In this document: positions 97 through 60,300 of the stretch, piece by piece | How the letters are laid out: each line of letters opens with the position of its first letter | How positions within the stretch are numbered: position 1 is the first letter of the stretch | Position numbers and translations under genes: made by a program | Notes under the pieces: model-generated | Database searches by the model: none | The model's input: only the letters and a program-made list of their open reading frames with translations | What the model was told of the DNA's origin: nothing | Origin: Sminthopsis crassicaudata | Lineage: Eukaryota | Assembly: GCF_048593235.1 (NCBI RefSeq) | Contig: NC_133619.1 | Location: 614,646,558 to 614,710,557, forward strand | DNA length: 64,000 nt | Direction: 5' to 3'

Positions 97-1029
97 GAGA
101 CTTTAGAACACAGAATGTCAGATCTGGGAAAGGCCTTAGAAAAAAAGGATGTCAGAACTGTGAGGGCCGTTAGAACCCAGGAGGTCAGATCTGGGAAAGG
201 CCTTAGAAAAAAAGGATGTCAGAGCTGTGAGGGCCCTTAGAACCCAGGAGGTCAGAGCTGGGAGGGCCCTTAGAACCCAGGAGGTCAGAGCTGGGAGGGC
301 CCTTAGAACCCAGGAGGTCAGAGCTGGGAGGGCCCTTAGAACCCAGGAGGTCAGATCTGGGAAAGGCCTTAGAAAAAAAGGATGTCAGAGCTGGGAGGGC
401 CCTTAGAACCCAGGAGGTCAGAGCTGGGAGGGCCCTTAGAACCCAGGAGGTCAGAGCTGGGAGGGCCCTTAGAACCCAGGAGGTCAGAGCTGGGAGGGCC
501 CTTAGAACCCAGGAGGTCAGAGCTGGGAGGGCTCTTAGAACCCAGGATGTCAGAGCCGGGAGGACCCTTAGAACCCAGGAGGTCAGAGCCGGGAGGGCCC
601 TTAGAACCCAGGAGGTCAGAGCTGGGAGGGCCCTTAGAACCCAGGAGGTCAGAGATGGGAGGATCCTTAGAGCCCAGGAGGTCAGAGCTGGGAGGGCCCT
701 TAGAACCCAGGAAGTCAGAGCTGGGAGGGCCCTTAGAACTCAGGATGTCAGGGCTGGGAGGGCCCTTAGAACCCAGGAGGTCAGAGCTGGGAGGGCCCTT
801 AGAACCCAGGAGGTCAGAGCTGGGAGGGCCCTTAGAACCCAGGAGGTCAGAGCTGGGAGGGCCCTTAGAACCCAGGAGGTCAGAGCTGGGAGGGCCCTTA
901 GAACCCAGGAGGTCAGAGAGGAGAGGGCCCTTAGAACCCAGGAGGTCAGAGCCGGGAGGGCCCTTAGAACCCAGGAGGTCAGAGCTGGGAGGGCCCTTAG
1001 AACCCAGAAGGTCAGAGCTGGGAGGGGCT
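97..1029 (+). repeat. 33-bp minisatellite array A (~28 units; unit CCCTTAGAACCCAGGAGGTCAGAGCTGGGAGGG)
   Basis: Direct reading. The unit translates as the 11-aa repeat PLEPRRSELGG in the ORF track. Units become degenerate toward position 1. Confidence 0.97.
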
Positions 1030-1147
1030 TAAGTAAATCAGAAAGACCTTATAGCATAGAATGTTAGAGCTAGAGTTAAGATCAGAAATTGAATGTCTAA
1101 AACTAAAAAGATTAGCAACTATGTCCTTTAAATTCATCCTTTTACAG

Positions 1148-1671
1148 NNNNNNNNNNNNNNNNNNNNNNNNNNNNNNNNNNNNNNNNNNNNNNNNNNNNN
1201 NNNNNNNNNNNNNNNNNNNNNNNNNNNNNNNNNNNNNNNNNNNNNNNNNNNNNNNNNNNNNNNNNNNNNNNNNNNNNNNNNNNNNNNNNNNNNNNNNNNN
1301 NNNNNNNNNNNNNNNNNNNNNNNNNNNNNNNNNNNNNNNNNNNNNNNNNNNNNNNNNNNNNNNNNNNNNNNNNNNNNNNNNNNNNNNNNNNNNNNNNNNN
1401 NNNNNNNNNNNNNNNNNNNNNNNNNNNNNNNNNNNNNNNNNNNNNNNNNNNNNNNNNNNNNNNNNNNNNNNNNNNNNNNNNNNNNNNNNNNNNNNNNNNN
1501 NNNNNNNNNNNNNNNNNNNNNNNNNNNNNNNNNNNNNNNNNNNNNNNNNNNNNNNNNNNNNNNNNNNNNNNNNNNNNNNNNNNNNNNNNNNNNNNNNNNN
1601 NNNNNNNNNNNNNNNNNNNNNNNNNNNNNNNNNNNNNNNNNNNNNNNNNNNNNNNNNNNNNNNNNNNNNNN
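1148..1671. other. Assembly gap (N); other gaps at 2722-2858, 15361-15500, 22209-22395, 24899-25055 and 27843-27970
   Basis: Runs of N, each adjacent to repeat or GC-rich sequence. Confidence 0.99.
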
Positions 1672-3582: not shown

Positions 3583-3735
3583 TCTTTTTTTTTTTTTTTA
3601 CTGAGGCAATTTGGGTTAAGTGACTTGCCCAGGGTCACACAGCTAGGAAGCATTAAGTGTCTGAGACCAGATTTGAACTCAGGTCCTCCTTATTCAGGGC
3701 TAGTACTCAATCCACTGCACTATCTAGCTACCCCC
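3583..3735 (-). mobile_element. Marsupial short CORE-SINE (WSINE1-like)
   Basis: poly(T) then gaggcaatttgggttaagtgacttgcccagggtcacacagctagg...tccactgcactatctagctaccccc. Confidence 0.85.
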
Positions 3736-14649: not shown

Positions 14650-16330
14650 CAATTTTATCTTATTTTCAAATCCCCATTCTCTATGACTCCCCTTTTCCCT
14701 TCCCTCTCTTCTCTCTACCAATTGAGAAAGCAAGAAAAACAAGTCCTTTGTAACATACACAGATAGTAGAGCAATACAATTTCTTCCATTGGCAGAGTTC
14801 ACGAAAGAAAAGTATGTCTCAATCTGCTCCCAGAGTCTTATCACCTCTATCAGGAAATGGTAGCATTGTTCATGCTCTGGAATTGTGCTTGGTCACTGTG
14901 TTAGTCTTTGAAAGTTGCTTGAGTTTATCTTATTGTTGTGATTATATAAACTGTACTCCTGGTTCTGTTTAGTTCACTCCGCATCAATTCTTTCCAGATT
15001 ACTGTGAAATGCAGATTTAGTCCCTAAAAGCAGCCCCTTCATCATTTCTTACAGCACAATAGTACTCCAACACATTATACATTATAACTTTTATTTAATT
15101 TTTTTCTGAACATTTTCTCTGCTCCCAACCCAATCCTCCTCTACTTAATTGAGAAGATATGAACACAAAACGCATTACAAATATGATATCTTGCAAAAAC
15201 AAATTTCTACATTAGCCATGTTGTTTAAAAATAGTACCGAAGGAGGAGAATGAAGAGAGAAAGAAGAGAAGAAGGAAGAATAGGAGAAGGTGGAGGAGAA
15301 AGAGGAGAAGAAGGAAGAGAAGAAAGGAAGAGGAGGGGGGGAAAAGAAGGGAAGGATGAANNNNNNNNNNNNNNNNNNNNNNNNNNNNNNNNNNNNNNNN
15401 NNNNNNNNNNNNNNNNNNNNNNNNNNNNNNNNNNNNNNNNNNNNNNNNNNNNNNNNNNNNNNNNNNNNNNNNNNNNNNNNNNNNNNNNNNNNNNNNNNNN
15501 ATATTCTAAGTCTGCCATTTTTCTATTGGGGATAGATTTTGTGTTTCCTTATAAACTGTGGTTGGTCATCATGCTAAGTAAGGTTTTATTGTGTTATAAG
15601 AAATGAAGAAGGGCATGGTTTCAGAAAAACCTGGGAAGCGATGATGAGTATGATGTATGAGATGATGAAATGAATAGAACCAAGAACACAGTGTAACACA
15701 TGTTACTATGGCAACGGTAATATCATTTCTTATAGCACAACAGTTCTCCATCACATTCATACATCATAACTTGTTCAACTACATTGCAGTTGATGGGCAT
15801 CCCCTTGGTTTCCAATTCTTTGCCACCACAAAAAGAGCCCCTGGAAATTTTTTAAAATCTTTTTTTCTTTGATCTCCTTGGGGCATAGACCTACTGTGTG
15901 TATTGCTGGGTCAAAGGTTATACACAGCACAGTACCTTTTGAAGGCATAATTCCAGATTGCTTTCAAAAATGACTGCACTGGATTCCTATAGATTTGGGA
16001 TAGAAAATAGCCATCTGCATCCAGAGAGAGAACCATGGAGATTGAATGTGGATTGAAGCATTATAGTTTCACCTTTTGTTGTTTTACTTCTAGTGGGTTT
16101 TTTTCCTAGTTTGGTCTGATTTTTTTGACAAATATGAAAATATGTTTAAAAGAAATGCACATATTTAATTTATATCAGATTATTTGCTATTTTGGGGAGG
16201 GGAGGGTAAGGAAGAAAGGGAGAAAAATTTGAACACAGAGTTTTACAAAAACAAATATTAAAAATTATCTTTACATTTATTTGGAAAAATAAAAATATTA
16301 TTGGGAAAAACAAAACAAAATAAAACAAAA
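14650..16330. mobile_element. Cluster of older L1 3' fragments in both orientations, with a GA-rich tract and an N gap
   Basis: Antisense L1 3'UTR at 14650-15230. Sense piece ~15590-15720, antisense piece ~15722-15970, sense tail ~15980-16330. Confidence 0.7.
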
Positions 16331-17254: not shown

Positions 17255-17274
17255 AAACAAATTGAGGTTTATGG

Positions 17275-18182: not shown

Positions 18183-19104
18183 ACTCTGAGAGAAGAGGTT
18201 GGGAGGGATTTGTCCAGGCTTCCTGAAACAGCCCTCTTCTTGCCAATTTTGGCTTCCTACTTGGATCTGCCTTCCTTTGGTATGACCTCAGGTTCTAAAG
18301 GTCTAATTCCTCCTTAAAACTTCCATGACTTCAATGCCCATTTATTTGAAAAAAACAATTTACATTAAGTTATGATGATAACTAGTTAGACTAGTTAGGG
18401 TTTACTCAGAAGCTCACCAACCCATAGGGAAAGAATAGTGACTCTTGAAAACTAAATTTTATAATGTAGCCACAGCCACTCATAAAATCTTAGAAACAGG
18501 GATTCTTAGAATCATAGGCTCATGGAATTTTGGATTCATCAAATATTAGGATTAAAAAAAAAAAAGATACAGTTCTGACTGTGAACTTCCTAGTTAGGGG
18601 ACCATGGGCATATTATTCAGCATTTCTGAGCTTCAATACCCTCATTCATCTACAGAATGGGGATAAGGATGCCCAGACTCCCAAATTTACAGAGCGGTAG
18701 AGGAAAATCAATTTGTGAAACCTCAGAACTCTGTGGATCTATGGGGTATTATTAAAATCAGATGCACAGGATTTTAGAATCTTAGAATTTTACATTTTGA
18801 AAGATGCCTAGACAGTCATTTAGTCTAACCCTTTAATTGATGCTTGGTGGGTTGATGAATAGGGGGAGCCCCTCCTCTTTCTATCCCTCCTTCCAGAGGA
18901 TAGGGGAATCAGGTGGTTTGGTTTTAAAGGCAAACAAACATTAAATGTTTTAAGGCCTAAAGAAGACCAAGAAATCTTTGTTTATTTTTAAATTTTTTTT
19001 TTCTTTTTTTTGCTCCTTAGAGGGCTCTGTACAGAGAAGGAACAGATAGGAATAGATTCTCTATGAAGAGTTTATTTGGAAGCATTCAGAAGCATAGTCA
19101 ATGG

Positions 19105-19245
19105 AATGTTAGAGCTGAAAGGGACTTTAGACCGCAGAATGTCTGAAGATAGAATATCTGAACTGGGAGAGGCTTCAGAATATAGAATGTCCAAGCTGTA
19201 TTAAAATAGAGAATGTTAAAGCTGAAAGTGACCTTAGAACAGAGT
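19105..19245 (+). repeat. Degenerate relative of the 33-bp repeat (AGAATGT.AGAGCTG.AAGGGAC.TTAGA), ~4 units
   Basis: gaatgttagagctgaaagggactttagaccgcagaatgtc ... gaatgttaaagctgaaagtgaccttagaac. Confidence 0.7.
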
Positions 19246-20069
19246 ACCATGTTACAACTTCAGAGGATCTCAGAGAGAACATCTAGCCCAATTTAGCTTT
19301 TAAACTCTTGGTCAGATCGGGCTCAGCTGGTAGTCACCAATATGGTATGGCTTAGTTCTGGCACTGACTGTTCTGTATGATCTTAGGCATGTCATTTCCT
19401 TCCCTGGGACTCAATTATTTATAAAAAACGAAGGCATAACACTTAGACAATCTTCAGTAGCTCTTTTAGGAAGAAAATAGTCAGCGTCTTATGAAACTCA
19501 GGGCAGTTCATTTCTACTTTTAGAATATTCTAAAACCATTTCCTAATTTTATTTTATTTTATTTTATTTTTTTAGGAACATGATCTTTATAAGCAGAAAA
19601 CCAAATATTTTAACAATGATGTGTCCCAAATGAGACTCAGTGTGGTGTAATGAACAGGGTGGTCAACCCTGGATCAAAAGCAGGGTTCAAGTCCTGATAC
19701 TAGTGTAACAATGAAAAATTGAAGCCTCTCGGTGTCCTAGAAAACTCCTTAAAACCTTAAGTTGCAGAAGAATTTGCCCTTTCAGTTTGGACAAGCTGCC
19801 AGAGTGCTTTGCCATTTCCCTCTCCAGCTCATTTTATACATGAGGAAACTGAGGCAAACAGAATGTAGTGACTTGTCCAGGATCATACAACTAGTAAGTG
19901 TCTGAAGCCAGATTTGAACTCAGGAAGATGAGTCATCCAGGTCCAGTGCTTGGCCCATCATGTCTCTATGGCATTGGTAAATTTAAAAAAAATATATGTT
20001 TTATTCTGAATTTAAGAAATAAAACAAGTCGTTCCATAATTGCACATGAAAATGCAAATTTATCATGTG

Positions 20070-22208: not shown

Positions 22209-25055
22209 NNNNNNNNNNNNNNNNNNNNNNNNNNNNNNNNNNNNNNNNNNNNNNNNNNNNNNNNNNNNNNNNNNNNNNNNNNNNNNNNNNNNNNNNNNNN
22301 NNNNNNNNNNNNNNNNNNNNNNNNNNNNNNNNNNNNNNNNNNNNNNNNNNNNNNNNNNNNNNNNNNNNNNNNNNNNNNNNNNNNNNNNNNNNNNNATATT
22401 TCCTGTGAAGAGTACTGATGGTAATTTGGTAATGGACTCAAACCAGTTTACAAATGAAACTGGGGATGAGAAAAATGAAAGAACTTCCACAAAGTCACAT
22501 GGCAAATTGGTTGGCAGGATAAAAATCTACTCTTTTTCCATCTGAAACCCTATATTCCTCATCCCACCCCACTCATCCCACCCTCCAGCACTCAGCAGGC
22601 ACATCAACAGAATCCAAAAGTTGCAAGGGACCTCAGAGTGTATTCAGGTTAGCTTATACCTGAAGAATGACTTCAATTACATTCCTCCCAAAGGAGACCC
22701 CATGCATCTGGGAGCTCCCTATCTCCCAAGGTCTTCTATGACACTTTAGTACAGCTCCATCTGAAAGTTTTCTGAGGTGAAATCCTTGTGCAGTTTTCAT
22801 CCGTTACGTCTAATTTCTGACCTCTGAGTTCAAGTGGATCAAGCCTCCTCCTTTTCCCATGATTGCTAGCAAGAGTTCTCCTGTCCTCCCTAAATCATCC
22901 AAACAACAAACCAACAAACATTTATTGAGTTCATATTAGGTGGGGACCATAGTGCTAGGCACTAGATATATAAAGACTTAACAAAACAAGGAAACAAGCA
23001 AAAGATCCATTCCCTCCTTGAGTTTATACTCCATAATTCCTTCAACATCTTTGCCCAGCATCTTCCCCAGTCCTATCTCCATCATAAGAGAAGTTACGTG
23101 GTTAAAATTAGATTTAGCAATCATCGCTTTGGAGTAGGAACTGGCATTTCCACCTCATCCATGTAGATGAACTTCAATTTGCTTTTTCAAGTGTTATGTA
23201 ACAACCCAAATGACACACCTCCCTGTGCATGGATGGGGGGACACTCCTTTTGGGAAGGAAAGGAGCTTTGGCCTTTTCTAGATGAACGGTTGCACAGGAG
23301 GGAGACATGTCCTAGCAAAAATTGCTTGGCTGGCAGGACGAGTAGGGCCAGTCTTCTGCTATTCCTGCAGAGGTGTCGGACTGGTGCATCTCCCTCTCCA
23401 GAAAAACCAGTTTGGAGAGCACCACGCCTAGAAGATCATATGATGCAACTGTCTGTTAGTGTCCAATTGCATCAGGGTTTAAGAGATGTCCTTCCTTTAC
23501 ACCAGTGGGGGGTGGGGGAACATTATCCATGGGAGAAAAAGACCTCTCACCAGTGATAACCTGAAGGTTCTCTCTGAAGGTTGTACTGGTTGTTTGGGAG
23601 TAAACACATCTTGGGGACAAGTATCAACATGCCATTTCCTGAATGGCCCTTGATGCTAGAGGTTCAGCTGAATTCTAGTTTATGCTGCTTTTATTTTCTA
23701 TAAGGTATTTTGGTTGGTGTCTCAGGCAGGGGTTCCCATGACCAAAGTTTCATTACCAAGTGATCTGACTGCTAAAGGAGGGGGGGCAAGTGGTGGGGTG
23801 AAGTCTCCCTTAATTAGCCTGGTCCTTGGAAGTGGGATACAGTATAGGATTGTAGTGAATCCTGTGCAGGAAGGCAGAACCTGCTGGAGCTAGCCTTAGG
23901 AGCTCAAGGAATCAGCTCTCTGTAGCTGCTTTCATATCATTTCTTCATGAAAGGGATCAGAAAAAGGTTTTCCTAATTCAGCTTCCGATTAAAAAAATGT
24001 AGGGACACTCTAGTAGAGATACAACACATGTGGCTGTTTATTGTGTACCTTCTACAGGCAGAGAAGATACTAAGTTTCTACAAGATACAGTCCCTCCCCT
24101 AAAAAAGCAGTGGGATCTACATAGTTAATTACAGCCCGAAAGATCACAAGATGAGTCCATCAGAAGTTACAAAATAAAGAGCTTAGCAGAGTGTGGTTTG
24201 AGCAGAAAGATCCTGGAGGAAGTGGCATTTTGTGGAAGGGACTGCAGTTTTGCTCTGCTGGGAGAGAGATTTATCTAGGGTATGATGCACTTGGCTGGAA
24301 AACTGGAGATTAGGGAGGACATGTTGGATTTCAGAGAATTCTAAGAGTAAGGGCTGGTAGTCAGGCCATAAATGTTAATTAAGTGCTTGCTATACACCAG
24401 ACACACACAGAAAGGTAAAAACAGAGCTGGCAGGACTGATGGAGAAAATCAGAAATTGATTGGAGGTCAAAGTCCTATGCAGGTCTGAGGAATTCTGTCT
24501 CTGTCTCTGTTTATGTGAGTGTTTCTGTCTCTCTGCACGTCTTTCTATCTCTGTGTCTCTGTTTCTCTCTCTGTGTCTGTTTCTCTGTGTCTTCTGTCTC
24601 TGTCTCCCTCTTCCCTCTCCACACATGTGTATACAAACATATACATATACATTTATACAATACACTAATAAATCTATCACTTCTCCCCTTTTCCATCAGC
24701 ATTTTACACTTATTGTTGGAACTTGAGCTTTTTTTGTCAGTCACTTCTGAGTTCAAGTGGATCAAGCCTCCTCCTTTTCCCATGATTGCCAAACATGCCA
24801 AACAGTGCCAAACTCCCAAACAACCAGTACAACCTTCAGAGAGTACCTTCAGATTATCACTGGTGAAAGGTCTTTTTCTCCCATCACCCTCGCTGGTGNN
24901 NNNNNNNNNNNNNNNNNNNNNNNNNNNNNNNNNNNNNNNNNNNNNNNNNNNNNNNNNNNNNNNNNNNNNNNNNNNNNNNNNNNNNNNNNNNNNNNNNNNN
25001 NNNNNNNNNNNNNNNNNNNNNNNNNNNNNNNNNNNNNNNNNNNNNNNNNNNNNNN

Positions 25056-27550: not shown

Positions 27551-28829
27551 GTGAGTGGGTTGAAATCCTTTTCTTTCCTGGGATGAGGAGGGGGGGTGCG
27601 GGAACGGGAGGGGTGCGGTTTAGAGACGAGCGGTCCGGGTATCTCTTTAATGGGAGAGGGCTTAGTTTTTTCATCACTTTTAGTCCAGGTGGGGGGCGGG
27701 GGGGCTGCAATTGAAGCGCGATCAGTTTTGGGAGCGAGGGGAAAGTTTGGTTGTTTCCTTCTCTTTAAAGAGAAAAGGTTAAAAAAAAAACCACCACCCA
27801 ACCTGGGGAAAGGGAGGGGGGGGGGGCTAGGGGGAGGTTTGANNNNNNNNNNNNNNNNNNNNNNNNNNNNNNNNNNNNNNNNNNNNNNNNNNNNNNNNNN
27901 NNNNNNNNNNNNNNNNNNNNNNNNNNNNNNNNNNNNNNNNNNNNNNNNNNNNNNNNNNNNNNNNNNNNNNNAAGCGCCGGAGGAAGGCGAGGGTAGCCCG
28001 GAGAGCTCTGCAGCCTGGGATCGGAGAACGAGCCGCCCCGAGGGGCATCCGCTGCGGGGACCGGGCCCTAGAGTTGGGGGCACCCAGCAAAGTTGCGTGT
28101 TTTTTTGGTTGGAAGAAAAAAAAAAAGCCAGGTGGTGTTTTTTTTTTTTTTTTTAATTTAAATGGAGAGGGGTAGCATTTTTTTTTTTTTTTTTTTTATG
28201 TCTCTGGGAGAGAGGGCTCTTCTTTTTCACCGGCACCCCTCCCTCGTAGGGTCCGCCTCGCCCAGAACCCCCGGGGCCTGACTTCCCTTGGGGATGGAGA
28301 AGGCCGGAGACTTGGCTTTGGATAGACCCTCCAGCCGTTTGAGGCGGGGGAGGGAGGGAGCTGGGGGAGAGGGGGAGGGGAGGGGAAGATAATTGCCATT
28401 AATTTCACTGTGGGCTTTTAAACCGGATAGGAGGGTGCTGGCAGGCGGCTCTCAGACAAAAGCAGCAGGTGGGGGAGAGGGGCGACACGACCCCCCTTTA
28501 AACGGGAGAACCCCCAGGGAGACTGCTGGACTCCTTACAAGTATTTCCAAACCCTTTGCCGCCAGGATTTCGGGGTTATTTTTGGGGAGGGGAGGTGCAA
28601 TCTTGGATGCCCTCCCCGTTTTTTACTTTTTGGAGGACGCCTTTGGGGACGCGGGGGTGCACTTGTGTACTTTGGGGGGATCTTAAAGCGTTGCATGGCT
28701 TTTCCCAAACTTGCCCCTGTGGGGCCGGCTCGGGGACTTGGGTGGGTTCGGGTCGGGCTGGTTTCGCTTTCTCCCTTCCCTAAATTGACCCCCGCTTCTA
28801 TTGTGTCGTGGATGTGCCCGCCTGACTGC

Positions 28830-28834
<5 letters not shown>

Positions 28835-28884
<50 letters not shown>
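28835..28884 (+). repeat. (TG)25 microsatellite abutting the acceptor of the RCC2 ATG exon
   Basis: Pure TG run followed directly by TTCCTAG. Confidence 0.98.
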
Positions 28885-28886
<2 letters not shown>

Positions 28887-44200: not shown

Positions 44201-47200
44201 AGAGTCTCTGCTGGGGAAGGCTTCTTGCAGTTGGGACCATGTCCTCAATTTCCCCTCCCCACCAGCACCAGTAGTTTGCAAGTCCTTGCACTCTGTGTTA
44301 CCTTGGTGACCCACATTGACTCAGAAGACTTTTTATCTAGGAGAATGTAATGGGCAGCTACTCATTCCTTTTTATTCTTTGCATCTACAGAACCTAGCTT
44401 AACACTTCACTTAGTAGGTGCTGCTTAAGTGGTGGTTAAATGAATGTAACTAATACAGTGCTGTGCACTTAGTAGGTGCTGCTCTAATGTTTGAATAAAT
44501 GATACCTAGTACCTTGCTGTGCACTTAGTAGGTGCTGCTAAAGTGTTTGGGTTAGTGTTACCTAGTAAGGTCCCGTGCACTTAGTAGGTACTACTCAAGT
44601 GTTTGTTGAGTAACTTATCTGATAGAGTGCCATGAGTGTGGGAGGTGCTGGCTAAGTGGAGAATGAAAGTATTTTCCTAATAACCTTTTGATCTAGGTAG
44701 AATAACACTTCCCATTTTTCAGAAGAGTTGAAACTTGGGGCCAGAGCCAGGTGCTCTTGTCCCAAAGAACATTCATTTGCAGGGCACAGCTGTCCTTTGG
44801 TAATTTATTTCCTTCATTGGTAGGGTTTGGGAATCCTTGTACATGAAACAACCTAATCTGTCACCCGTTTGTTGTTCCAGCTGCTTACCGCAATCTGGGG
44901 CAGAACTTGTGGGGGCCACACAGATATGGCTGCCTCTCCGGGGTCCAGGTACGGACAGTGGTCTCGGGCCCCTGTGCTGCTCACAGTCTCCTCATCACCA
45001 CAGAAGGAAAACTCTGGAGCTGGGGTAAGTGAGAAAGGAGCTCTGACTCCTTCTGTCCTTGGGTTACCTGGCTCACTTGCAGAGCAGGCCCCTCATAGGT
45101 GGGACCAGAGCCTTCCTTTGAAGTTGGCAGCCTTTTTTCCCCCAGTAGGTTTATTTGGGAGAGACTTCACTATGAGCCCTTTTGCTTCACCTTTCCTTTA
45201 TAATCCAGAATAAATAAATCTTCTTTTTACTTTTTGGCCTGCTGGCGGATGATCAGATGTTTGCCTCCTTTTGTTATCTGGAGGGCAGGGCCCTCCCTCT
45301 GCCTCCTCTCTTAATGTGACTTCACTTCATTTCACCTTGGTTGCATCTGCAGCTTCCATTTGGGCGGCGCCATACAATTGGATTCCCGTCTGAGGGGGTT
45401 CTTCTCCGCCAGACTGTCACCTTCTTGCTTCGTTGCACAGCGTGACAGAAGAACTCTGTTCTTGGTGCTCCTCCCTCCCCCCCCATGTTGGCTTTTTGCT
45501 CTCCTTCCCCTTCCGCCACATCCCATTAGAATACAATCCACAAAGCATCCTTCTCCTGCCACCATCAGCCACCTCATTTCACTCCCAGGCAGTACCTTGC
45601 TCAGTGGTAACAGTCCCAGGTCCTGCACTCCAGTGTTCTGTGATTGTGGCAGAATGCTTGCTGGGCCCCTTGGAGCGGGCCTCCGGACGGCCTGTTCTGC
45701 AGGGAACCGTGTTCCTAAGAGTAGAGCTGGGACTGGTTCACCTGCTCTGCCCCCCAGGTGTTTGAGTTTGCCTTTGGCTCCTCGGTTTATTTTCTGAATT
45801 GATTCTTCTCCTTTTGCCTTTGTTTCTTGTCCCTGAGTAGGAAAGACAGCTATTGTTGTGGGAATGGGGGCTAGACTTGGAGATTCTACTGCAGGCACTG
45901 GTTATAATGCTGGGAAAATCTCTTGGCCTCTGCCAGCCTTGATTTTCTCATCTATTAAATGGAATCATTGTAGCTCCTATCTGTCAGAATTATTCTGGTT
46001 ATCAAATGAGATGGTACCTGGAAAGTGTATGGCACACAGTACTTGACACATAGTGAGAGCTATACATGAAACTGCGATAATAGTGATGATTGTTGTTGTT
46101 GTTATTTGTTGTTTTTTCATGGATCCTTTGGAAGTATTGGTGCAGCTTACAAAACCTTTCTCAGAATAAGGTTTTAATTGCATAAAATAACATCTTCCAT
46201 ATTTTATGCAATTCTATGGATTGCAAAGGAAACCATTTCTTTCACATTAAAGATGTAATACCTGGTTCCATCCTACCCCCAGCCAAATTCACAAACTCTT
46301 TATTTTCAAAACCATAACAGGCGGCCCCTGGTCAAGAAGCCCTAAATCAGACAACCACAAAGGTCCATCCCAGTACCCAGATTTTGTAACTTCGCTGGTG
46401 TTGCTCTATTTTAATTCATTTCTTTATTATATATTAGTGAAGGTATTGATGGCCAAGATATGTCCCTGAAAGTTCCTGGGATTTCCCAGACCCTTTCCTT
46501 TCTGATTCTTAAGTCCGCCAGCATTGCTCACCACCCTTTGTTGTTAATCTTCTGGCCAGCTTTTCGTCCAGATGATGCTATTTTTGTTTCAGTCTATTTG
46601 AACCATTTTTTGCAGTTTCATGAGATGCTTCACCAAGGTCCAAATACAAGAAACATCTGTTGTGTTCCTTTGGCTGCTAATTTTGTAGTTCCGCTGAAGG
46701 AAAAAAAAAGCCAACAAGTTTATTTGGCCCAAATTTATACTTTATGGCCTCATGATGACATACTTAGACTGCTTACGGTCCCAGTGTCTCTTAGTTGTTT
46801 TGAAAAAAAAAAAAATCCCTTCAGCAGTCATCAGCCCCTTACTCGGTCCAGATCTGTGTAAAATCATTTTATATAAGATTGGACACCTTAGGCCTCATGC
46901 ATTTTTAAAGTCACCATAAATAATCTGGTGATTTTGTTGTTATTATTGTTTCTTTGGTCATATGAGAGCTAGCAAGGATTTCACAGGCCATCCAATCCCA
47001 ACACCCTTTCCAAATGAGGAAACTGAGACCCAGAGCAATGAAGGGGCTTACCCCAGGTAACGAATGGTGTCAGAGGTGGGATTTGGGGACAGCCAAATGG
47101 TGCAGTGGACAGAGCCTTGGAGTCAGGAGGAGCTAAATTCAAATCCATCCAGACACTTAATGCTTACTAGCTGTGTAACCCTGAGCAAGTCACTTAACTT

Positions 47201-50200
47201 CAGTTGCCTCACTGAAAAAAAAATGGGATTTGAATCCATTTCTGTCCAGTGATCTTTCAAATCTGTGGACTGAGGGCAAACTTGCTCTCAGTACAAGGAA
47301 GCTGACAAAGATCAAAGAGCCGTTAATCTAACAGCATTTGGACAGGAATTCACTTCCCCACATCCATCCTCCATTTGAATATTTCCTCATGATGGAGAAC
47401 TCGTTACTTTATAAGGTGTTTGAGGTTTTTTGGCAGTTCTGGTTTTTAGGAAGTATAGAATGAATACTTTTGATGGAACCTAGGATTTGTCTCATAAGGC
47501 ATTTATTGTTTCAGGCTCCCCACACTGGATTCCCTGTAGATAAACGTAACTGTTTGGCGACTCTCTTTGGTGGCCATTGACCACACTTTGGGCCCCATGG
47601 GATAATTCAGAATCCTGGGTTTTCTCCCAGGCAGACTGGATGCCATGCCAGGTGGACACATGGTTGGTTGTACTTGGGTTAAAGCTTTCCAAAAGAAAAA
47701 TTTCAAGGCCTGGACCAGGCCTTAATTCTGGCGTATTAAATTCATTTCTTGAATGTTAGGATATCTGAATTGAAAACACCTTTAACTCAACCCTATTGCT
47801 GAGAACAGTTTCTTTTTGTCCATACGGTAATCATTCACACATCTAAAGACCATCATTCTATCTTGATGTTTTCTGCTTGGCTCTCTTGGAATGTTTTCCT
47901 TTCAGAGACTGGGAGTATCCCAGCTTTCAAGCTGTAAGGCACTGACTTATACCCTCTGCTGTGATAGATGAGGGAAAAGAGGGAGGTTATGGACCAATGA
48001 GTGGATTTTGACCAATTAAAGTGGATTTTGAGCTCAGATCCTATGACTTCAGAGTAAGGGCTTTTCCATTGCACCTACACTATCCTCTTCACAGTTTTAG
48101 CTAATTCCAATTTAAGGACAAGGTTAATATTCCCCAGGAATAAAAAAATCCCCATTTTGGTTTTTTCTTTGTATATACAGAATATGAGAGCTTGAAGGAA
48201 CCTTAGAACTCAGGAGGTCAGAATTGGGAGGGCCCTTAGAACCCAGGATGTCAGAGCTGGGAGAACCCTTAGAACCCGGGAGGTCAGAGCTGGGAGGGCC
48301 CTTAGAACCCGGGAGGTCAGAGCTGGGAGGGCCCTTAGAACCCAGGATGTCAGAGCTGGGAGAACCCTTAGAACCCAGGAGGTCAGAGCTGGGAGGGCCC
48401 TTAGAACCCAGGAGGTCAGAGCTGGGAGGGCCCTTGGAACCCAGGAGGTCAGAACTGGGAGGGCCCTTAGAACCCAGGAGGTCAGAGCTGGGAGGGCCCT
48501 TAGAACATGGGAGGTCAGAGCTGGGAGGGCCCTTAGAACATGGGATGTCAGAGCTGGGAGGGCCCTTAGAACCCGGGATGTCAGAGCTGGGAGGGCCCTT
48601 AGAACCCAGGAGGTCAGGGCTGGGAGGGCCCTTAGAACAAAGAATGTCAGAGTTGGCAGGGGCCTTTGAGGTAATTTAATTCCATTTTCCTGGATCTTCA
48701 TTAAAAGGAGACAGGCTCAGAGAAATGAAGATAGACATTTAGTAGGGGGGGGGGGGGATATAACCCCAGTTCCAAATCTACTATATAGGAATGCTCATGG
48801 CCCCTTAGGCCAGTGTTGTCAAACTCCTGTCATTAGGCCATATCAAACTACACATAAATTAAGAAGTGCAATGCTATTTATGTTATTGTATTTTTATTTT
48901 GTTATATTTCCCAATCACATTTAATGTAGTTTGGGCACTTGAGAGTGTTGCCGGACAGGTGTGTCTGACAGCTGCCAAAAGAACATTTTGTCTAGCTTTA
49001 TCCCACACTTTATCTCTTGATTAGCTTTTAGGGAAGGGGATAGGTGCCTGTGGACGAAATTCTGATCTGTGGTGGCTGTTTACAGGTTACTCAGTAGTTA
49101 AAGATTTCTATGGCAGGGGATTTGAGCTCCGTTTATTAAGTGGATAAAAATAAGAAAAATGACAGACATGATCCCCGTGGGCCGTGGAACAGGCTGAAAG
49201 CACCAAGATCAAATGCTTTAGAGGCAGGTGTCAAAAAATACCATTCATGAAAACATAGTTATGACATGGCGGTGGGATGCATCCAGACAGTGAGTGTTCT
49301 GATTACACCTGCAGATGCTGGCTGGATGTTATTTTTACATTAGCTTTTTATATATTTTGTATGCATTTCTACATTGATGTTTCCCTGGCTGGCTGATGAT
49401 TGATGAATGGTTGGAGTAGGGGGAAGCATTTAGTGCTTAATATGTACAAAGAGCTAAGGATACCAATTGCCACTCCTTTTGGGGAACTCCCCTCCCCATG
49501 TGGAAAGACTGCAGCTAGAGGAAGTTTAGTTGGACACAGGAAAGTCCCTGAGGGTGAGTGGCAAAGCAGGATGACAATAGATCTTCCTTTAGTGAATTTT
49601 CCTTTCCTGAGACCATAGGGACTCCTATGTTAAGCCTCACTTTGCATCTCTTCCCTGTCTTGATTTTCTCTTGGTCTTCTCAGGTCGAAATGAGAAGGGG
49701 CAACTTGGACATGGAGATACCAAGAGAGTGGAAGCCCCCAAACTCATTGAAGTCCTCAGCAAGGAAGTGATTGTGTCCGCCGCATGTGGGAGGAACCACA
49801 CTCTGGCTTTGACAGGTATGCAGGATGATCCTTTTTGGACAGAGTGAGCCCTGAGGTGCTTCAGTGGCAGACTTGAGGGTATCATGACGTTTCCAGATGG
49901 CCAGCTGGGGAGCAGGCAACGTCTTGGAGACCTTTGGAAGAAAGGCCTCAGAAACAGGAAGTACCTCTAGCAGGGTGAAAATGAAGATTAACTGTTTCCA
50001 TTTGCAAATGGGAACAAAGCATTTCTTTGTGCTCTCATTTTTTGATAAGAGATGGTGATTCTGGAAAGTATCAGTTTATTCCACCTTTGGAACACTCCAT
50101 CTTCAGCAAATGAGCAGCATATTTAATATTTCTGTGTTTGAGATAACTTTGTTGTCATAACATTCAGAATGTTCACTCTCTTCCCTTTTTATTTTATTCC

Positions 50201-53200: not shown

Positions 53201-56200
53201 TCATGTTATTTAGTTCCTCTTCTTTCTTCCTAAAGGCCTTTTCTTTTTTTTGTATTCTCCTGACCTCTTTCACAAAGAATAGTTGAGCCCATTAAGTTCC
53301 CTTGATGTCCTTGTAAATTTTTCATGCTCCATTGCAAAAGGATGAGCAGGGGTTGGTTTATTTTGTTAGTCATCTTTTTTTCCCCCTTTCCCTTCCCCAA
53401 CTTCTCTCTTCTCTGTCCTCCTTTCCTTTCATTCTTCCTTTTCCCCTCTCCTCTTCTCCTCCTTTAGTTTCTCTTTGTGTCTCTTTTTTCTCTCCCCTCT
53501 TCCCTTTTTCTCTTCCTCTGTTTCTCTTTTTCTGTGTCTATCACCTTTTTTCTCCCTCCTCTTCCTTTTTCCTTTTTAGTTCCTTTCCTTTCTTCCTTCA
53601 TCCTTCTATTTCCCTTTCTTTCCCATTCTCTTTCCTTCTCTCACTTTCTTTCTTCCTCTTCTCTTTCCTGCCTATTCCTTTTCTCTTTTAATTTTAAAAC
53701 ATTACTATTGTTTTTTTTCTTTTTAGATAATGTACAATGGCCAGCCAATTACCAAAATGGCTTGTGGGGCTGAGTTCAGCATGATAATGGACTGCAAAGG
53801 AAACCTGTACTCCTTTGGGTGCCCTGAATATGGTCAGCTGGGTATGGCAACCTATTCTTGTTAAAAGCTTCTGTTATTTCAACTGCACATTGTACACCAG
53901 AATTCAGTAGAGGCTAAACATACATGTTTTCAAAGTGTGGTCCATTGATCTTAGATAATAGCTGGTCACGACTAAGTAATTGTAAACTTTCACCAGAATG
54001 TGAAACATGGAGGGTGGAGCTCTCCCTGTAGCCACAAGTCACAACTGGGCAGGGGAGTGATTTTCTGTAGTCCTCCATCACTCATAACCCATTGTATTTT
54101 TCACCCTCACCAGGAAAGGAAAATTAGGAACCCGAGCTCAGAGTTAGGAAGGAGATACCTGGGCATTTTCCTTTCTTTCTCATTCTTTTCAGTTATTCAG
54201 TTGTCTTCTACTACACTAGCCAGGACATTTTTTTCATTCCAAAATCCTCCCCCCACTGAAAAGACTCAAAACATCACTTTCCCACAGGGCTCAGAATGAT
54301 CACTTGTCCTCCACGCACCAGGCCGTAGCTCTGCTGTCTCTATCATTCTAACGTAACCATCCTGGGCAGTTGTTGATCAGGCCCTAGATCTTCAGCTCCC
54401 CAAACTGTGGAGGAATGTGGAACTACACTCATCCCAACACCAGGCAGAAATGAGCAATAAAAGGGAATTGTATTGTATTGGAAGGGGATTCTTAGTAATA
54501 AAAAGATCACCCAGGAGACTCCTTCATCTTTCATCTAATGATATGTTTAGAGCTTGGTCAAAATAAGTATGTTTTCCTGCCCTCTGTAAACATGACACCG
54601 AGGAAGATTTGTCTCTACTTTCATTCCAAACAAAAGCCTTCATTCAATATGAAGTCCACAAAGTACATGGAGAGCTTTAGGGCTGGAGGGGAGGGAGGGT
54701 CCACAGAGTATATGGAGAGCTTTAGGGCTGGGGATTCACAGAATACATGGGAGCTTTTGGGCTAGGAGGGGTCCACTGAGTATGTGGAGAGTTCTGGGGC
54801 TGGGGATCCACAGAGTATATGGGAGAGAGCTTTAGGGCTGGGGGGGAAGGTCCACAAAGTATATGGAGAGTTCTAGGGCTGGGAGTGGGGAGAAAGGAGG
54901 AAGTAGGATAAGATGAGACTTGGTCCGTACCATACAAAACAGTAATAGGCATATAGTGATAATTGCCACCTTAGGCCTGTGGGGAGGGCTTGTTCTCATG
55001 GAGACCAAAGAAGTGTCTTTTGAGCTGAACTTGTGAGAATCCTTTGAAATTCAAGCAAAGAGGAAAGACAGAAAAAATAAGAATATAATTCCATGGGAAG
55101 CATGAGGAAGGCACTAAACAGCCAGGGCATGTTATTGAAGGGGAGCAGTAAGCTCTCCTAGAAAGCTGTTGTCACCACCTAGACCCTGAGATAGAGACTG
55201 GACTGAGATGGCCTTGGGCTAGAGAAACAAACAGGGCCCAAGATTAGGGAGCACAGGGCTGCCTATATGACCGGACTGGATAGAGATATAGAAGAAACAA
55301 AATTGCATGGTAACAATTGATTTTCCTCCAGTACAAACTAATTTGTGTGGTCACCTACTCTATCAACAATGTCCTGACCCTCCAAGCTTATTCTGAACTA
55401 CTTGGGGGTTCCAAGCAGGCTCACTTTGCCTTCATTGGCCAAATCGGGTCAGCCAGTCAGTCTGCAGACATTATGAAATCCTTTGGATCAGGTCCTGGGA
55501 TCAGAGAAGGGAGGGGTTCCTGCCCTCAGGGAGCTGAGAGTCAGGCAGGCCCCTGGAGACCCAGACACCTGCCTCTCCCCAGCCCAGTGAGGCTGCTCGT
55601 CTCCGGTTCTTGATGAATAAGTGGGCCGTGGTCATTCTGCTTTTAAATCTTGGCTTTCTGCTTGGTGACAGGACACAATTCTGACGGGAAGTTCATTGCC
55701 CGGGCTCAGAGGATAGAATATGACTGTGAGCTGGTCCCCCGCAGAGTAGCCATCTTCATTGAAAAGACCAAGGATGGACAGATTTTGCCCGTCCCCAACG
55801 TGGTGGTCCGAGATGTTGCCTGTGGCACCAATCACACGGTAAGGGTGCGCCTTTGGTGGCTCTGTGTGTCGGGGGCATTTTTGGTGTCCTCACCGTGGGA
55901 AAGAGGAGAAGTGAGTGAGGGTAGCCCATTACTGTAAGGAGCGAGCCCACGGGGTTGGGGTGGTCCAAGGAGCCCACGGCCGTGAGCTCGTCAGGTGGCC
56001 AGCACAGTCTCTGGGCCCTCTGGGTCTGCAGGAAAGGCATCTTGGATCATGAGGTTCAACTTCCCCTCAGGAGATGGAGAGAGAGGCCGATGAAATCATT
56101 TGTAAGTGGCAAAGTTGGGGTTTTTACCTTGACCCCTTCTGGAGTCCAAGTGCAGTTTTCTTTGCATTGTGTCGTACTGGGGCATGTGGGGTCAGTGTTT

Positions 56201-57264
56201 GGGATTCCCAAAACAACTTTGCTGTGCAGCTCCTTGGGACTTAGCGTGAGACTGGATCGGTCCCGGTTCAGAGCTGGAGGAGAGTCGGGGGCAGTGAGTA
56301 TAGAAGGAAGATAGTAGAGCTGAACATACCACAGAAAACACTGCTCAGCTGCCTCTAGGAGAGATCGCTGCAGGTACAGAGAAGTCAGTGCCTTGTCTCA
56401 GGCACCAAGACGCTAAGACCCAGGCCAAGTTCAAGGCCGGGCCCCTGCCTCCCAGTCTGACATGGTTTCTACTCTCTCCCCCATGACTCTTTCCTCCGGC
56501 CCAGACATCCTGCACTGGGACTGGTTCAGATTTGCATCAAGTCCCAAGGAGCTCCATGGCCAATCTTGCCATAAATGAGTGGAAATTAATCCTGTTATCC
56601 ACCAAATCGTTACATATGGCGGAATATTTTTGCATAATTATGCATGGTGCCTGCATATTTTTATATTGACTATTTTAGGGGAGAATACCTGCTGTTATGG
56701 ACAGTTTTCCCTAAACCAACCCTTCCATATTCATAAAGTATAGAGCATCATGGGCTTGGGTAATGTTCATACTTAATGAGCTGTGTCATCAGCTGATCAG
56801 CAGGCACTTAAGAAGCGCCTAATAAGGGTGCTGTGTAAAGAACAAGAATGGAACAGTCCCCCCTCTCTGGGGAAAGCACTGAGGACCGTGTAAGGACGGG
56901 CAGCCTCTGGCAGCTGGCCTTGGAGCCTCTTGTCCTGCCTGCCTTGTGTGGGGCTCTGGCTGGATCACTTCTTGTCCTGCTGCAGGCATGGGGACATGCT
57001 GAGGTTTCCACGGGCTCCTAGCTCTGGAAATTACACAACTGCTTTGTCCTCCTTAGGCTGCATTAGGCGGAGGTTGATTGATTTTTTAAAAATAGGCCTT
57101 ATTGGGTAGTTTTTGCTTTGCATCACCTGAATTCTCTCTTTCTCCCTCCCTCTCCCCTCCATTTCCTTCCCGAGCACAATTGATCTGTAGATTGATACCT
57201 GATTACTGGTAACATATAACACTGGTGATAGGACAGTCTTTCTAGGAAGAGGTTAACTACAAAG

Positions 57265-57340
<76 letters not shown>

Positions 57341-60300
57341 AGGATCCCTAGAGTTTTGGCCTTGTTCCGTTTCTTTGCGCTTTCTGCAGTTTAATCAATA
57401 TTGTGATATGAATTGAATGAGTTACTTTGCTGTCTGGAGACATAAGCCTCTTGCTTTCAGATAGGGGAAGGGAAAAGCATGTGACTTTAAACAATTAAGA
57501 TGAGAGCAGGAAAGTTGGCAGAGAAAGGTGTCTTGGGTTCCCAGGGCCTGTGTCTCAGTTCCTGTCTCGGTTGCCATTCTCCACCCGCGGTCTCTCTTCC
57601 GGCCCTTCGCTGACTTACCTGGAGCTCCAGATCCCTTTGGGAGCTCGCCCCATCCCGTACCGGTGGGCTTCTAACTTGAGTTTTCGGTTCTCTCCTCTCT
57701 GTATACAGCTGGTTCTAGACTCTCAGAAACGTGTCTTCTCCTGGGGCTTTGGAGGCTACGGCCGGCTGGGCCACGCAGAGCAGAAGGACGAGATGGTCCC
57801 TCGCCTAGTGAAGCTCTTTGACTTCCCAGGGCGTGGGGCAGCACAAATCTATGCTGGCTACACCTGTTCCTTTGCCGTCAGTGAAGTGGGTTAGTGGATA
57901 TTCTTCCTGATTTTAACTCTGGGTTTTGAAGGTATTAAAAACAAGATAATTTTCCCTTTGATAATCCAGTGCTCCTGCAGGGGGACAGGAAGAGATATTT
58001 TCCATTTTCACTTAATAGTTGTTGTTTTTTTTTCCCCAATTACATGTAAAGATAGTTTTCAACACTCATTTTTGAAAGATTTTTGAGTTCTAATTTTTTT
58101 TCCTACCTTCCCTCCCTGCTGCCCAAGAGCGAGTAATCCATTATAGGCTATATAGGCGCACTCATATTAAACATATTTCCATTAGGTTTTGCATTTTCAA
58201 TGTCCCGGAAGTTACTTTGCTTCCATTCTTATGTTTGTCTAAAACAGGTTAACTGCTACATGGTATATTCAGAGCTGGCCTAGATAGAAAGGCAGGACAC
58301 ATGAACGTAGGCCCTGCTTTCTTGTTACACAGGGGTCTTAGAACACACAATGTAAGGGTTGGGAGAAGGGCCTGCTCTTAGAACAGTTGGTCAGACCTGG
58401 AAGGGGCTTAGAACAGAGCGTCAGGAAAGGCCCCTAGAACACAGAAGGTCCCTCAACTCTCTGACATTGTATATTCCCTGAAAGGTGCAGATAGGTATTG
58501 TTGTAATAGTTTTCCATGCCAAAGAAATCACAGATCTTGTTCCCATTCGTTATTCTTTTTCTAATGGAATCCATTCCTTTTTTTTTTTCCTCAATAATAT
58601 TTCATTTTTCCAATTACATATAGATAATTTTCAATGTTCACTTTTTGTAAGATTTTGAGTTCAGATTTTTCTCTCTCCAAGATAGCAAAAAAATCTGATA
58701 ATAGCTTATACGCATGCAATCGTTGGAAACATTTCCATATTTCTAATGTAACCCATTCTTTTTCTCCTGGTAGTAGTGCCAGGTCTGCTCTCCTCATTGG
58801 ATGACTCCTTTGGATTAATTAGTTCAGAGCTTTTTATTTACTGCCCACTGTGTGCCCCACGCTAAGCATTTAGTAGACAAAGAAAGGCAAGAACAGTCCT
58901 GGCCCTAATGTACCTTATCATCTGCTGATGGGGCGGGCGACTTGTACAGAACTAGATTGTGCAGAGTAGGCGGCAGGCACTTTGTAGTCCTAATTTCCCA
59001 GGATTGGACCATGGGGATTTTCTAGTTTTTCATATCCTTGAAAGAATTTTTCTTACCAAGATTCCTTAGGAGTTTTTGTGTTTTCTTTAGGTGGCCTGTT
59101 TTTTTGGGGTGCTACCAACACTTCTCGGGAGTCCACCATGTATCCCAAAGCTGTCCAGGACCTCTGTGGCTGGAAAATTAGAAGTTTAGCTTGTGGGTAA
59201 GTGACTGGTGGTACTCAAGGCAAAGTCCTCCTGTCCGGCAGCATACCAGAAGTGGTCCGTTCACTTGGGCTGGATGGGAAAGGCTGTGAAGTAGTAGTAA
59301 GAGGGTGTCTGCCGTGGGCATATCTACATAAGCTATATCTATATCTATGTATGTATGCATTTATTTGGTCCTCGCAACAATTCTGGGAGACAGGTAGGTA
59401 GCATTCCTATGTTGCAGATGAGGAAACAGAGGCAAACAGGTTAAAGTGACTTGTCTGGGGTCATTCAGCAGGTGTCTAAGGCTGGATTAGACCGAGCTGC
59501 CCAGTAAAGTTCTTGTCTTAATAAAGAAAGTCATGAAGGGTTTGATGCTTGAGCAAGGTTTTCTGTTTGTTCCTAGAAGTAAGTTGGGAGGCCCTGGAAT
59601 AGTGACCTAGTGAAATCTGGTTTAGAAATTCTCTTTGACAGTATCATGTGAGGTGGGGAGGAACAGGGGACATTGAGGAAAATTTGGGGTGTGAGGTCTA
59701 GGCGAAGGTGCTGTTGGAGTAGACAGAGGGGATGATTGTGAGAAATTGGGTGGTGGTAAGACAAAAATAGAAATGATGTAGATGCAAGGGAGGAATCCAG
59801 AGGTGACACGACTGTGGTGCAGGAGCATGTGTAGGACTGAAGAATATATAGGGCTCAGATAAAGTCACTGAGGAAAATTTACAGCTGGAAGGGCCTTCAA
59901 AACTCAGGAGGTCAGAGCTGGGAGGGCCCCTAGAACCTGGAATGTCAGAGTGGGGAGGGCCCTTAGAACCCAGGAGGTCAGAGCTGGGAGGGCCCTTAGA
60001 ACCCAGGAGGTCAGAGCTGGGAGGGCCCTTAGAACCCAGGAGGTCAGAGCTGGGAGGGCCCTTAGAACCCAGGAGGTCAGAGCTGGGAGGGCCCTTAGAA
60101 CCCAGGAGGTCAGAGGTGGGAGGGCCCTTAGAACCCAGGAGGTCACAGCTGGGAGGGCCCTTAGAACCCAGGAGGTCAGAGCTGGGAGGGCCCCTAGAAC
60201 CTGGAATGTCATAGTGGGGAGGGCCCTTAGAACCCAGGAGGTCAGAGCTGGGAGGGCCCTTAGAACCCAGGAGGTCAAGAACTGAAAACAAAACCTCAGA

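What the first reader, a model, noticed from the sequence alone, without database searches (positions are those of the whole stretch)
97..60277. One 33-bp minisatellite unit shared by three separate, co-oriented arrays around RCC2
Seen: arrays at 97-1029, 48185-48670 and 59881-60277 share the same dominant unit CCCTTAGAACCCAGGAGGTCAGAGCTGGGAGGG, all on the + strand, 47 kb and 11 kb apart. Each array's edge units are more diverged and closer to AGAA(C/T)..AGAATGTCAGAG.TGG.AGGG. Established: that edge form resembles the MIR/MIR3 segment AGAATGTTAGAGCTGGAAGGGACCTTAGAG, and array B runs out into MIR-core-like sequence. Inference: SINE-seeded minisatellites that expanded independently should not all reach the same derived unit. 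This suggests ectopic gene conversion between loci, or a dispersing minisatellite family. This is the strongest unexplained pattern in the window.
Basis: partly seen in the sequence, partly recalled or inferred. Interest (0 to 1): 0.72.

Follow-up and report, generated by a model that had tools for sequence, protein, structure and literature searches.

The report
Dispersed SINE-head minisatellite family, dunnart
Three stretches around the RCC2 gene of the fat-tailed dunnart repeat the same 33-base unit because they belong to a repeat family present at very many places in this and at least five other coded organisms, not because these three places recently swapped sequence; how the family gets into old jumping-gene remnants is still open.

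Summary
There are three + strand arrays (about 28, 14.5 and 12 copies) with an identical 33-bp consensus unit, unrelated flanks and more diverged edge units.

The shared unit is not local. Exact words of it occur in runs of five other coded organisms. In each of four organisms, thousands of assembled contigs lie on the array, against single-copy flanks. Array C sits at the same place in a relative whose flanks differ by about 10%.

Each array carries its own duplicated variants. None is shared between arrays except ancestral states and two single-site changes, so recent exchange among the three loci is not supported.

The homogeneous tract lies in phase between very degenerate old units, next to dissimilar sequence. 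That argues against both independent growth in place and retroposed copies of one array-bearing master.

Best reading: these are members of an old, dispersed minisatellite family. Its unit is a GC-enriched derivative (six changes, all AT to GC) of the tandem 33-bp head unit of MIR3/Ther-2-type SINEs. It was probably seeded into old SINE heads by homology-directed copying, which is inferred and not shown.

This is a new member of a known kind, of moderate interest. No genome-wide census or repeat-library check was possible.

The parts
1..101 (+). Old, degenerate 33-bp-period units to the left of array A. The element runs off the window start.
   Evidence: Read directly. The nhmmer alignment of the old element at 19.1 kb reaches 81-247 with E 4.1e-08. 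Positions 1-80 were judged by eye only.
102..1026 (+). Array A: about 28 units, 13 of them exact consensus. Its private variant blocks are a 34-bp AAAAAAAGGATG unit three times, GATCTGGGAAAGG three times and GCCGGG three times.
   Evidence: TRF 103-1026. Unit tables.
1027..1147 (+). Degenerate old units to the right of array A, cut by the assembly gap at 1148.
   Evidence: unit 1027 has 16-17 differences in 33. The nhmmer alignment of the 19.1 kb element reaches 1078 with E 2.8e-05.
19101..19260 (+). Old element with about five degenerate ancestral-type 33-bp head units and no young tract. It serves as the in-window reference for the ancestral state.
   Evidence: nhmmer hits to arrays A, B and C have E from 4e-08 to 1.5e-04, with one weaker hit at E 0.012.
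48167..48199 (+). Old unit in phase at the left of array B.
   Evidence: 11 differences from the ancestral type and 14 from the derived type. The nhmmer alignment starts at 48180.
48200..48661 (+). Array B: 14 units, 3 of them exact. Private variants are CCCGGG (position 13 G) in four units, ACATGGG in two, and GGATG..GAGAA in two. The last unit, 48629-48661, is of ancestral type.
   Evidence: TRF 48187-48666..
48662..48830 (+). Presumed old SINE body following array B in phase.
   Evidence: Read. The nhmmer alignment of the 19.1 kb element runs to 48697 with E 5.9e-08. Calling it MIR3 rests on a recalled consensus, and the test against an in-window CORE copy was not significant.
59861..59893 (+). 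Old unit in phase at the left of array C.
   Evidence: 14-16 differences in 33. The nhmmer alignment starts at 59875.
59894..60277 (+). Array C: 12 units, 6 of them exact. It has a private composite variant, CCCCTAGAACCTGGAATGTCA.AGTGGGG, at 59927 and 60191.
   Evidence: TRF 59883-60277.. Contigs of coded organism B run from both diverged flanks about 30 nt into the array ends (records 26 and 32).
60278..60330 (+). Degenerate unit-like sequence to the right of array C. The evidence is weak.
   Evidence: unit 60291 has 14-16 differences. The reciprocal nhmmer hits between the B and C right flanks have E of only 0.02 to 0.046.

Best explanation
The three arrays are members of an old, abundant, dispersed minisatellite family of dasyurid-type marsupial genomes. 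Its 33-bp unit is a GC-enriched derivative of the tandemly repeated 33-bp head unit of an ancient SINE, which I take to be MIR3/Ther-2. It differs from that unit by six changes, all AT to GC.

The identical dominant unit is the family consensus, inherited from a common source. It is not the product of recent exchange among these three places. After each array was founded it evolved privately, by point mutation (mostly GC to AT) and by duplication of blocks of one to several units.

At each locus the homogeneous tract lies in phase inside a much older, independently inserted and independently decayed run of head units. I therefore infer that the tract was copied in by a homology-directed DNA process. 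Candidates are ectopic gene conversion or synthesis-dependent repair from another family member, or reintegration of excised array circles at a homologous head. It then expanded by unequal exchange or slippage.

Shown: the family is genome-wide and present in several organisms, the variants are private, array C is orthologous in a relative, and the young tract sits in phase within old units.

Inferred: the naming of the SINE and the copying mechanism.
For:: runs of organisms B to F (8 other studies) hold 0.14-0.17 of the sampled words. That share is the size expected if only the unit's own words are held.

- 7783, 5927, 10202 and 4279 contigs of organisms A, B, C and F lie on 59000-61000.
- Of these, 6347, 4357, 8506 and 2955 fit the stretch at two or more places.
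- 1482, 639, 1598 and 530 are at least 99% alike.
- Summed contig depth on the array reaches 9.1e5 in the dunnart run against 21 on the flanks. The tool warns that this is not a copy number.
- Organism B contigs cover both flanks with about 10-11% substitutions and enter both array ends.
- The loose-end consensus in front of the unit in all four organisms reads AGAGCTGGAAGGGACCTTAGAACATAGAAT. This is the ancestral-type unit in tandem.

each array has private multi-unit variants. Tract units show 0-4 differences in 33, against 11-18 in the flanking in-phase units.

flanks and bodies are not alike between loci.

an old five-unit element at 19.1 kb is homologous to all three arrays and aligns across their edges.

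the six ancestral-to-derived changes are all W to S (P about 0.002 under equal rates). Of 35 variant classes inside the arrays, 24 are S to W.

Literature:
- MIR3/THER-2 has 678,295 copies in the Tasmanian devil and the longest activity period of the marsupial SINEs (PMC3403934).
- A satellite that spreads by inserting into older repeat clusters through microhomology, and is abundant on circular DNA, is documented in Drosophila (PMC7403614).
- Gene conversion between SINE copies is documented for Alu (PMC8230782).
Against: No census of the assembly was possible, so the number, size and placement of family members are unknown. Many of the laid contigs are ancestral-type SINE heads rather than derived-type arrays.

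Only one or two distinct 31-mers may underlie the cross-organism word sharing.

The copying mechanism rests on three loci, and no donor is known.

The MIR3 assignment could not be tested, because no Dfam or Repbase was on hand and one search was not significant.

If arrays turn over and drift neutrally, three identical consensus units after at least about 5% per-lineage divergence are somewhat unlikely (roughly 0.01-0.03 by my estimate). Some correcting force or later founding may be missing from the account.

Three arrays in 64 kb seems dense for the family. That could still point to a local process.
Confidence: 0.6

Rival explanations
1. Retroposition. Each array is the head of a separate insertion of a late MIR3/Ther-2 subfamily whose master copy already carried a derived-unit array. 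The shared unit is then the master's sequence.
For: MIR3/THER-2 had the longest activity period of the marsupial SINEs (PMC3403934). Intermediate unit forms appear among the loose ends, for example GCTGGGAGGGACCTTAGAACATGGAAT, as expected of subfamily succession. All three arrays have the same orientation relative to the sequence that follows them.
Against: The units bordering the tract on both sides are very diverged (11-18 of 33) and differ between loci. The downstream sequences of A, B and C are not alike. Copies of one master should share edges and body and be about as old as the tract. No derived-type head with a young body occurs in the window.
Confidence: 0.2
2. Local ectopic gene conversion. 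The three co-oriented arrays near RCC2 homogenised one another.
For: The arrays are co-oriented and close together. Three of about five recognisable head elements in the window carry the tract. That looks denser than the family-wide contig counts suggest.
Against: No private variant block is shared between arrays. Only ancestral-state T17 and A15 and the single-site T11 and G23 recur. The same unit is in five other coded organisms and in thousands of contigs. Array C predates the split from organism B. A's linkage depends on scaffolding across six gaps.
Confidence: 0.08
3. Independent in-place expansion at three old SINE heads, converging on one unit through biased mutation or GC-biased repair.
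For: The edges grade towards ancestral states. All six derived states are W to S.
Against: The consensus units agree at 33 of 33 positions, although the local founder units are 30-50% decayed. Current variation within the arrays runs S to W. The unit is present in other organisms.
Confidence: 0.03
4. Assembly or polishing artefact. Multi-mapping reads pulled three different arrays towards the commonest genomic unit.
For: The scaffold has many gaps. No contig spans any array, so the internal sequence is unverified. Runs of a second sample of organism A hold fewer of the words, 0.67-0.74.
Against: Private variants survive in every array. Exact contigs of the dunnart run enter both ends of array C (records 2 and 8). 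The unit itself is abundant in raw-data contigs of four organisms.
Confidence: 0.05

Closest known systems
MSR1, the human dispersed 36-38 bp minisatellite family (PMC6112826, PMC4725990)
   Same: One minisatellite unit of similar length recurs as short arrays at many separate loci, often in or near genes. [quoted passage not shown]
   Different: A SINE-head origin is not part of what I read about MSR1. The present unit lies in phase inside old SINE head repeats and is shared by several marsupial organisms. No effect on gene expression was tested here.
Rsp-like satellite spreading into older 1.688 satellite clusters on the Drosophila X (PMC7403614)
   Same: A younger tandem repeat appears at many euchromatic loci inside pre-existing clusters of an older repeat. 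The proposed route is microhomology or repair plus circular DNA, with later local expansion by unequal exchange.
   Different: Here the recipient is the tandem head of a SINE, and the young unit is a derivative of the old one. Full homology rather than microhomology could therefore guide it. No circular DNA data exist, and the organism is a mammal.
Gene conversion among Alu SINE copies (PMC8230782) and Alu-derived minisatellites (the latter from my own knowledge, not read here)
   Same: Dispersed SINE copies exchange sequence non-allelically, and SINE parts can seed minisatellites.
   Different: Alu conversion replaces diagnostic sites and does not install a multi-unit array. Alu-seeded minisatellites are usually locus-specific in their derived unit.
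SVA-type composite retroposons with an internal VNTR (PMC6928650, listed in a search but not read in depth)
   Same: A tandem array of 30-50 bp units is associated with a SINE-type element and present at many loci.
   Different: SVA copies share common flanking modules and are spread by retroposition. Here the sequences bordering the arrays are old and unlike one another.

Membership tests
Minisatellite (tandem repeat, unit about 10-100 bp) | Head-to-tail copies of one unit, with several copies. | tested here: met
   period 33, with 27.9, 14.5 and 12.0 copies and 89-90% matches.
Dispersed minisatellite family (MSR1-like) | The same unit at many unlinked loci with unrelated flanks. | tested here: met
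   In the window, the three arrays have unrelated flanks. Genome-wide, 6347 dunnart contigs fit the array at two or more places and 1482 are at least 99% alike. No exact census was made.
Dispersed minisatellite family (MSR1-like) | Regional clustering of family members. | tested here: inconclusive
   Three arrays in 64 kb seems dense, but no genome-wide map was available. A's placement crosses six gaps.
MIR3/Ther-2 CORE-SINE derivative | The unit is homologous to the SINE's 5' head sequence. | tested here: inconclusive
   Homology to an old five-unit element at 19101-19260 (E 4e-08) and to a high-copy ancestral-type unit seen in four organisms. Equating that element with MIR3 rests on a recalled consensus, since no Dfam or Repbase was on hand.
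MIR3/Ther-2 CORE-SINE derivative | A CORE domain follows the head in the same orientation. | tested here: inconclusive
   By eye, the right flanks of B and C resemble the core. Alignment to the in-window CORE copy at 59370-59500 was no better than shuffles. A's flank is cut by a gap.
Retroposon-borne VNTR (SVA-like, or array-bearing SINE subfamily) | All copies share the same bordering element parts, of about the same age as the array. | tested here: not met
   The flanks are not alike. The bordering units have 11-18 differences in 33, against 0-4 in the tract.
Retroposon-borne VNTR (SVA-like, or array-bearing SINE subfamily) | Target-site duplications around array plus body. | not tested
   The 3' ends of the old elements could not be defined.
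Locally homogenised repeat cluster (ectopic conversion among neighbours) | Derived variant blocks shared between the neighbouring arrays. | tested here: not met
   The variant blocks are private to each array. Only ancestral-state and single-site variants recur.
Annotated satellite or repeat-library entry | The unit equals the consensus of a curated entry. | not testable with these tools
   No repeat library was available. Full-text search for four unit substrings found no paper, and no dasyurid satellite paper describes it.

The most novel reading that the evidence does not exclude
The 33-mer is a self-propagating tandem repeat that is not a transposon. It colonises the tandem heads of the several hundred thousand old MIR3/Ther-2 SINE copies by homology-directed copying, either ectopic conversion or reintegration of array circles. 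Exchange with the rest of the family keeps it on one consensus across tens of millions of years and several marsupial lineages.
Probability: 0.3. Interest if true: 0.6.

Novelty: new member of a known kind. Interest (0 to 1): 0.42.

Why it matters
Dispersed minisatellite families are few, and how they spread is poorly understood.

A family whose young arrays sit in phase inside old SINE heads, in a genome with several hundred thousand such heads, would be a clean natural system. Filled and empty orthologous sites across the sequenced dasyurids could separate homology-directed spread from retroposition.

In practice, the family will confuse assembly, read mapping and variant calling in marsupial genomes, so it should be in their repeat libraries.

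For RCC2 itself, nothing suggests a function. Two arrays are intronic and one lies upstream.

Tried and rejected
- **Other copies in public metagenome contigs:** two exact-pattern scans (35 and 25 bases of the derived unit) found nothing. These collections probably hold no marsupial host DNA.
- **Retrieving other arrays through translated ORFs:** a word search with the 124-aa open frame of array C gave no hit at E of 0.001 or better. I did not repeat it.
- Searching by words gave only a first-reader note on other MIR-seeded arrays.
- **Common element around the arrays:** blastn and local alignments of the flanks were at shuffle level.
- **CORE-SINE body test:** alignment against the in-window copy was not significant.
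- **Hairpin-driven slippage:** three units folded as DNA gave z of -1.86 only, with 8 of 200 shuffles as good. I dropped this.
- **Continuing GC-biased drive inside the arrays:** rejected, because within-array variants are mostly GC to AT.
- **CTCF-like or G-quadruplex readings of the unit:** considered by eye and dropped as poor fits. They were not tested.
- **A coding role:** dropped. Four of six frames are open simply because the unit lacks stops, the arrays are intronic or intergenic, and one search was blank.

The single reads call showed contigs only, so depth is not a copy number.

Organism names stayed coded, so I do not name the relatives.
Full report
**1. Observation**

Tandem Repeats Finder reports three arrays of period 33 with the same consensus in rotation:
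- 103-1026, 27.9 copies, 90% matches.
- 48187-48666, 14.5 copies.
- 59883-60277, 12.0 copies.

I read all three directly. A scan with the 33-mer found 52 copies with 9 or fewer mismatches on the + strand. All lie inside the three arrays, and none lies on the - strand.

An indel-aware parse gives 13 of 27, 3 of 14 and 6 of 12 exact consensus units.

**2. Gaps**

The six N runs are at 1148-1671, 2722-2858, 15361-15500, 22209-22395, 24899-25055 and 27843-27971.
- None interrupts an array.
- B and C lie on one gap-free stretch.
- A is separated from them by all six gaps, so its distance and even its linkage rest on scaffolding.
- A's right flank is cut after 121 bases.
- I filled no gap and could not test continuity across them.

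**3. Context**

Earlier notes of this scan name the genome as the fat-tailed dunnart.

RCC2 lies on the + strand.
- The exon at 49674-49820 matches PDB chain 5gwn_A residues 92-135 (E 5.7e-32).
- The exon at 57706-57891 matches residues 260-320 (E 1.4e-47).
- An ORF around 28989 begins like the RCC2 N-terminus. This identification is from my own knowledge.

B and C are therefore intronic and in the sense orientation, and A lies upstream.

**4. The unit is not local**

The look-up of sequencing runs on 59700-60480 lists six runs of organism A that hold 0.67-0.93 of the sampled words. It also lists fifteen runs of five other coded organisms, from eight other studies, that hold 0.14-0.17. That share is about what the array's own words would give.

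I laid four runs, of organisms A, B, C and F, on 59000-61000 at 80% likeness.

| Measure | A | B | C | F |
|---|---|---|---|---|
| Contigs laid | 7783 | 5927 | 10202 | 4279 |
| Fit the stretch at two or more places | 6347 | 4357 | 8506 | 2955 |
| At least 99% alike | 1482 | 639 | 1598 | 530 |

The contigs that fit two or more places are those that lie on the repeat.

Summed contig depth reaches 9.1e5 on the array against about 21 on the dunnart flanks. The tool warns that this is not a copy number, so I use it only as a sign of very high multiplicity.

A 2285-base contig of organism C holds four units with 6 differences inside other sequence (record 10).

**5. Age of array C**

Contigs of organism B cover both flanks of array C with about 10-11% substitutions. 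Each runs about 30 bases into the array from its side and ends there (records 26 and 32). The derived-type array was therefore already at this place before organisms A and B split.

**6. Ancestral unit**

In all four organisms, the consensus of the loose ends in front of the unit reads AGAGCTGGAAGGGACCTTAGAACATAGAAT. This is a high-copy, tandemly arranged ancestral-type unit.

In the window, the only other unit-like copies are old. One is a run of about five degenerate units at 19101-19260 and the other is a single copy at 22609. Both are on the + strand. nhmmer aligns the 19.1 kb element to A, B and C with E from 4e-08 to 1.5e-04, and across their edges to 1078 and 48697.

From memory, this head matches the 5' end of MIR3/Ther-2. 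I could not test that, because no repeat library was on hand and an alignment of the right flanks to an in-window CORE copy was not significant.

MIR3/THER-2 has 678,295 copies in the Tasmanian devil and the longest activity period of the marsupial SINEs (PMC3403934).

**7. Derived versus ancestral unit**

The two units differ at six positions, and all six changes are AT to GC. GC content rises from 45% to 64%, and the probability under equal rates is about 0.002. Neither unit contains CpG.

Inside the arrays, variants run the other way: 24 of 35 variant classes are GC to AT. The GC gain therefore happened in the source lineage. The arrays now decay in the ordinary direction.

**8. No recent exchange among the three arrays**

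Each array has its own duplicated variant blocks:
- A has a 34-bp AAAAAAAGGATG unit three times, each next to a GATCTGGGAAAGG unit, and GCCGGG three times.
- B has CCCGGG in four units, ACATGGG in two and GGATG..GAGAA in two.
- C has a seven-to-eight-site composite unit twice, 264 bases apart.

None of these occurs in another array. What recurs is T17 and A15, which are ancestral states, and two single-site changes, T11 and G23.

**9. Young tract inside old repeats**

At every locus the homogeneous tract (0-4 differences in 33) is bordered in phase by units with 11-18 differences. The sequences beyond the tracts are not alike between loci.

This argues against retroposed copies of one array-bearing master, which should share edges and body of the same age. 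It also argues against independent growth in place, because local founder units were already badly decayed and would have left private changes in each consensus.

A DNA-level, homology-guided transfer from another family member, followed by local expansion, fits best. This is inference. Precedents are a Drosophila satellite that inserts into older repeat clusters and is abundant on circles (PMC7403614) and conversion among Alu copies (PMC8230782).

**10. What stays unexplained**

- Array C is older than the split from organism B, yet half its units are exact consensus. This needs recent renewal from unmutated units. I estimate the chance at roughly 0.2-0.3 per array under drift, and about 0.01-0.03 for three arrays if all are that old. 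Otherwise it needs correction from other loci.
- Three arrays in 64 kb looks dense.
- The first derived-type unit at the left of both B and C carries the same C-to-T change at position 11.

**11. Comparison and novelty**

The nearest analogue is the human MSR1 family, a 36-38 bp minisatellite dispersed over many loci and clustered on 19q13 (PMC6112826).

I found no paper that contains the unit or describes such a family in dasyurids. That search covers open-access text only.

I class this as a new member of a known kind. An unseen repeat-library entry could make it already known.

**12. Limits**

- There was one reads call, and it showed contigs only.
- Organism names are coded.
- No census of any assembly was possible.
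- The arrays' internal maps are unverified.
- Only short motifs were typed.

Noticed in passing
window 54655-54883: A tandem array of period 35/72 (3-5 copies, 71-77% matches). Its unit, TCCACAGAGTATATGGAGAGCTTTAGGGCTGGGGA, faintly resembles the 33-mer (GAGAGCT...GGGCTGGGG). It may be a much older array of the same origin or unrelated.
   Followed up: no
window 44408-44605: A 56-bp tandem repeat of 3.5 copies with 79% matches. By eye it looks SINE-derived, so it may be another small SINE-seeded array in an RCC2 intron.
   Followed up: no
window 59402-59468: A very high-copy CORE-SINE fragment. Summed contig depth is 16,000-50,000 in four organisms, and the loose ends read CCCAGGGTCACACAGCTAGTAAGTGTCTGA.
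   Followed up: partly
window 19101-19260 and 22609: All recognisable head-type elements in the window (A, 19.1 kb, 22.6 kb, B and C) are on the + strand, that is five of five. The number is too small to call this a bias.
   Followed up: partly
window 48200 and 59894: The first derived-type unit at the left edge of both B and C has the same C-to-T change at unit position 11. Unit 730 of A has it as well. This could mark the original 5' end of the transferred tract or be recurrent mutation.
   Followed up: no
window 28830-28885 and 57270-57337: Long pure dinucleotide runs, (GT)28 just upstream of the RCC2 start-codon exon and (GT)34 in an intron.
   Followed up: no
window 48745-48757: A run of 13 G inside the presumed old SINE body to the right of array B.
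   Followed up: no
window 1-27971: The upstream 28 kb is broken by six assembly gaps, with some contigs of only about 1 kb between them. The order and distance of array A relative to RCC2 are therefore uncertain.
   Followed up: partly
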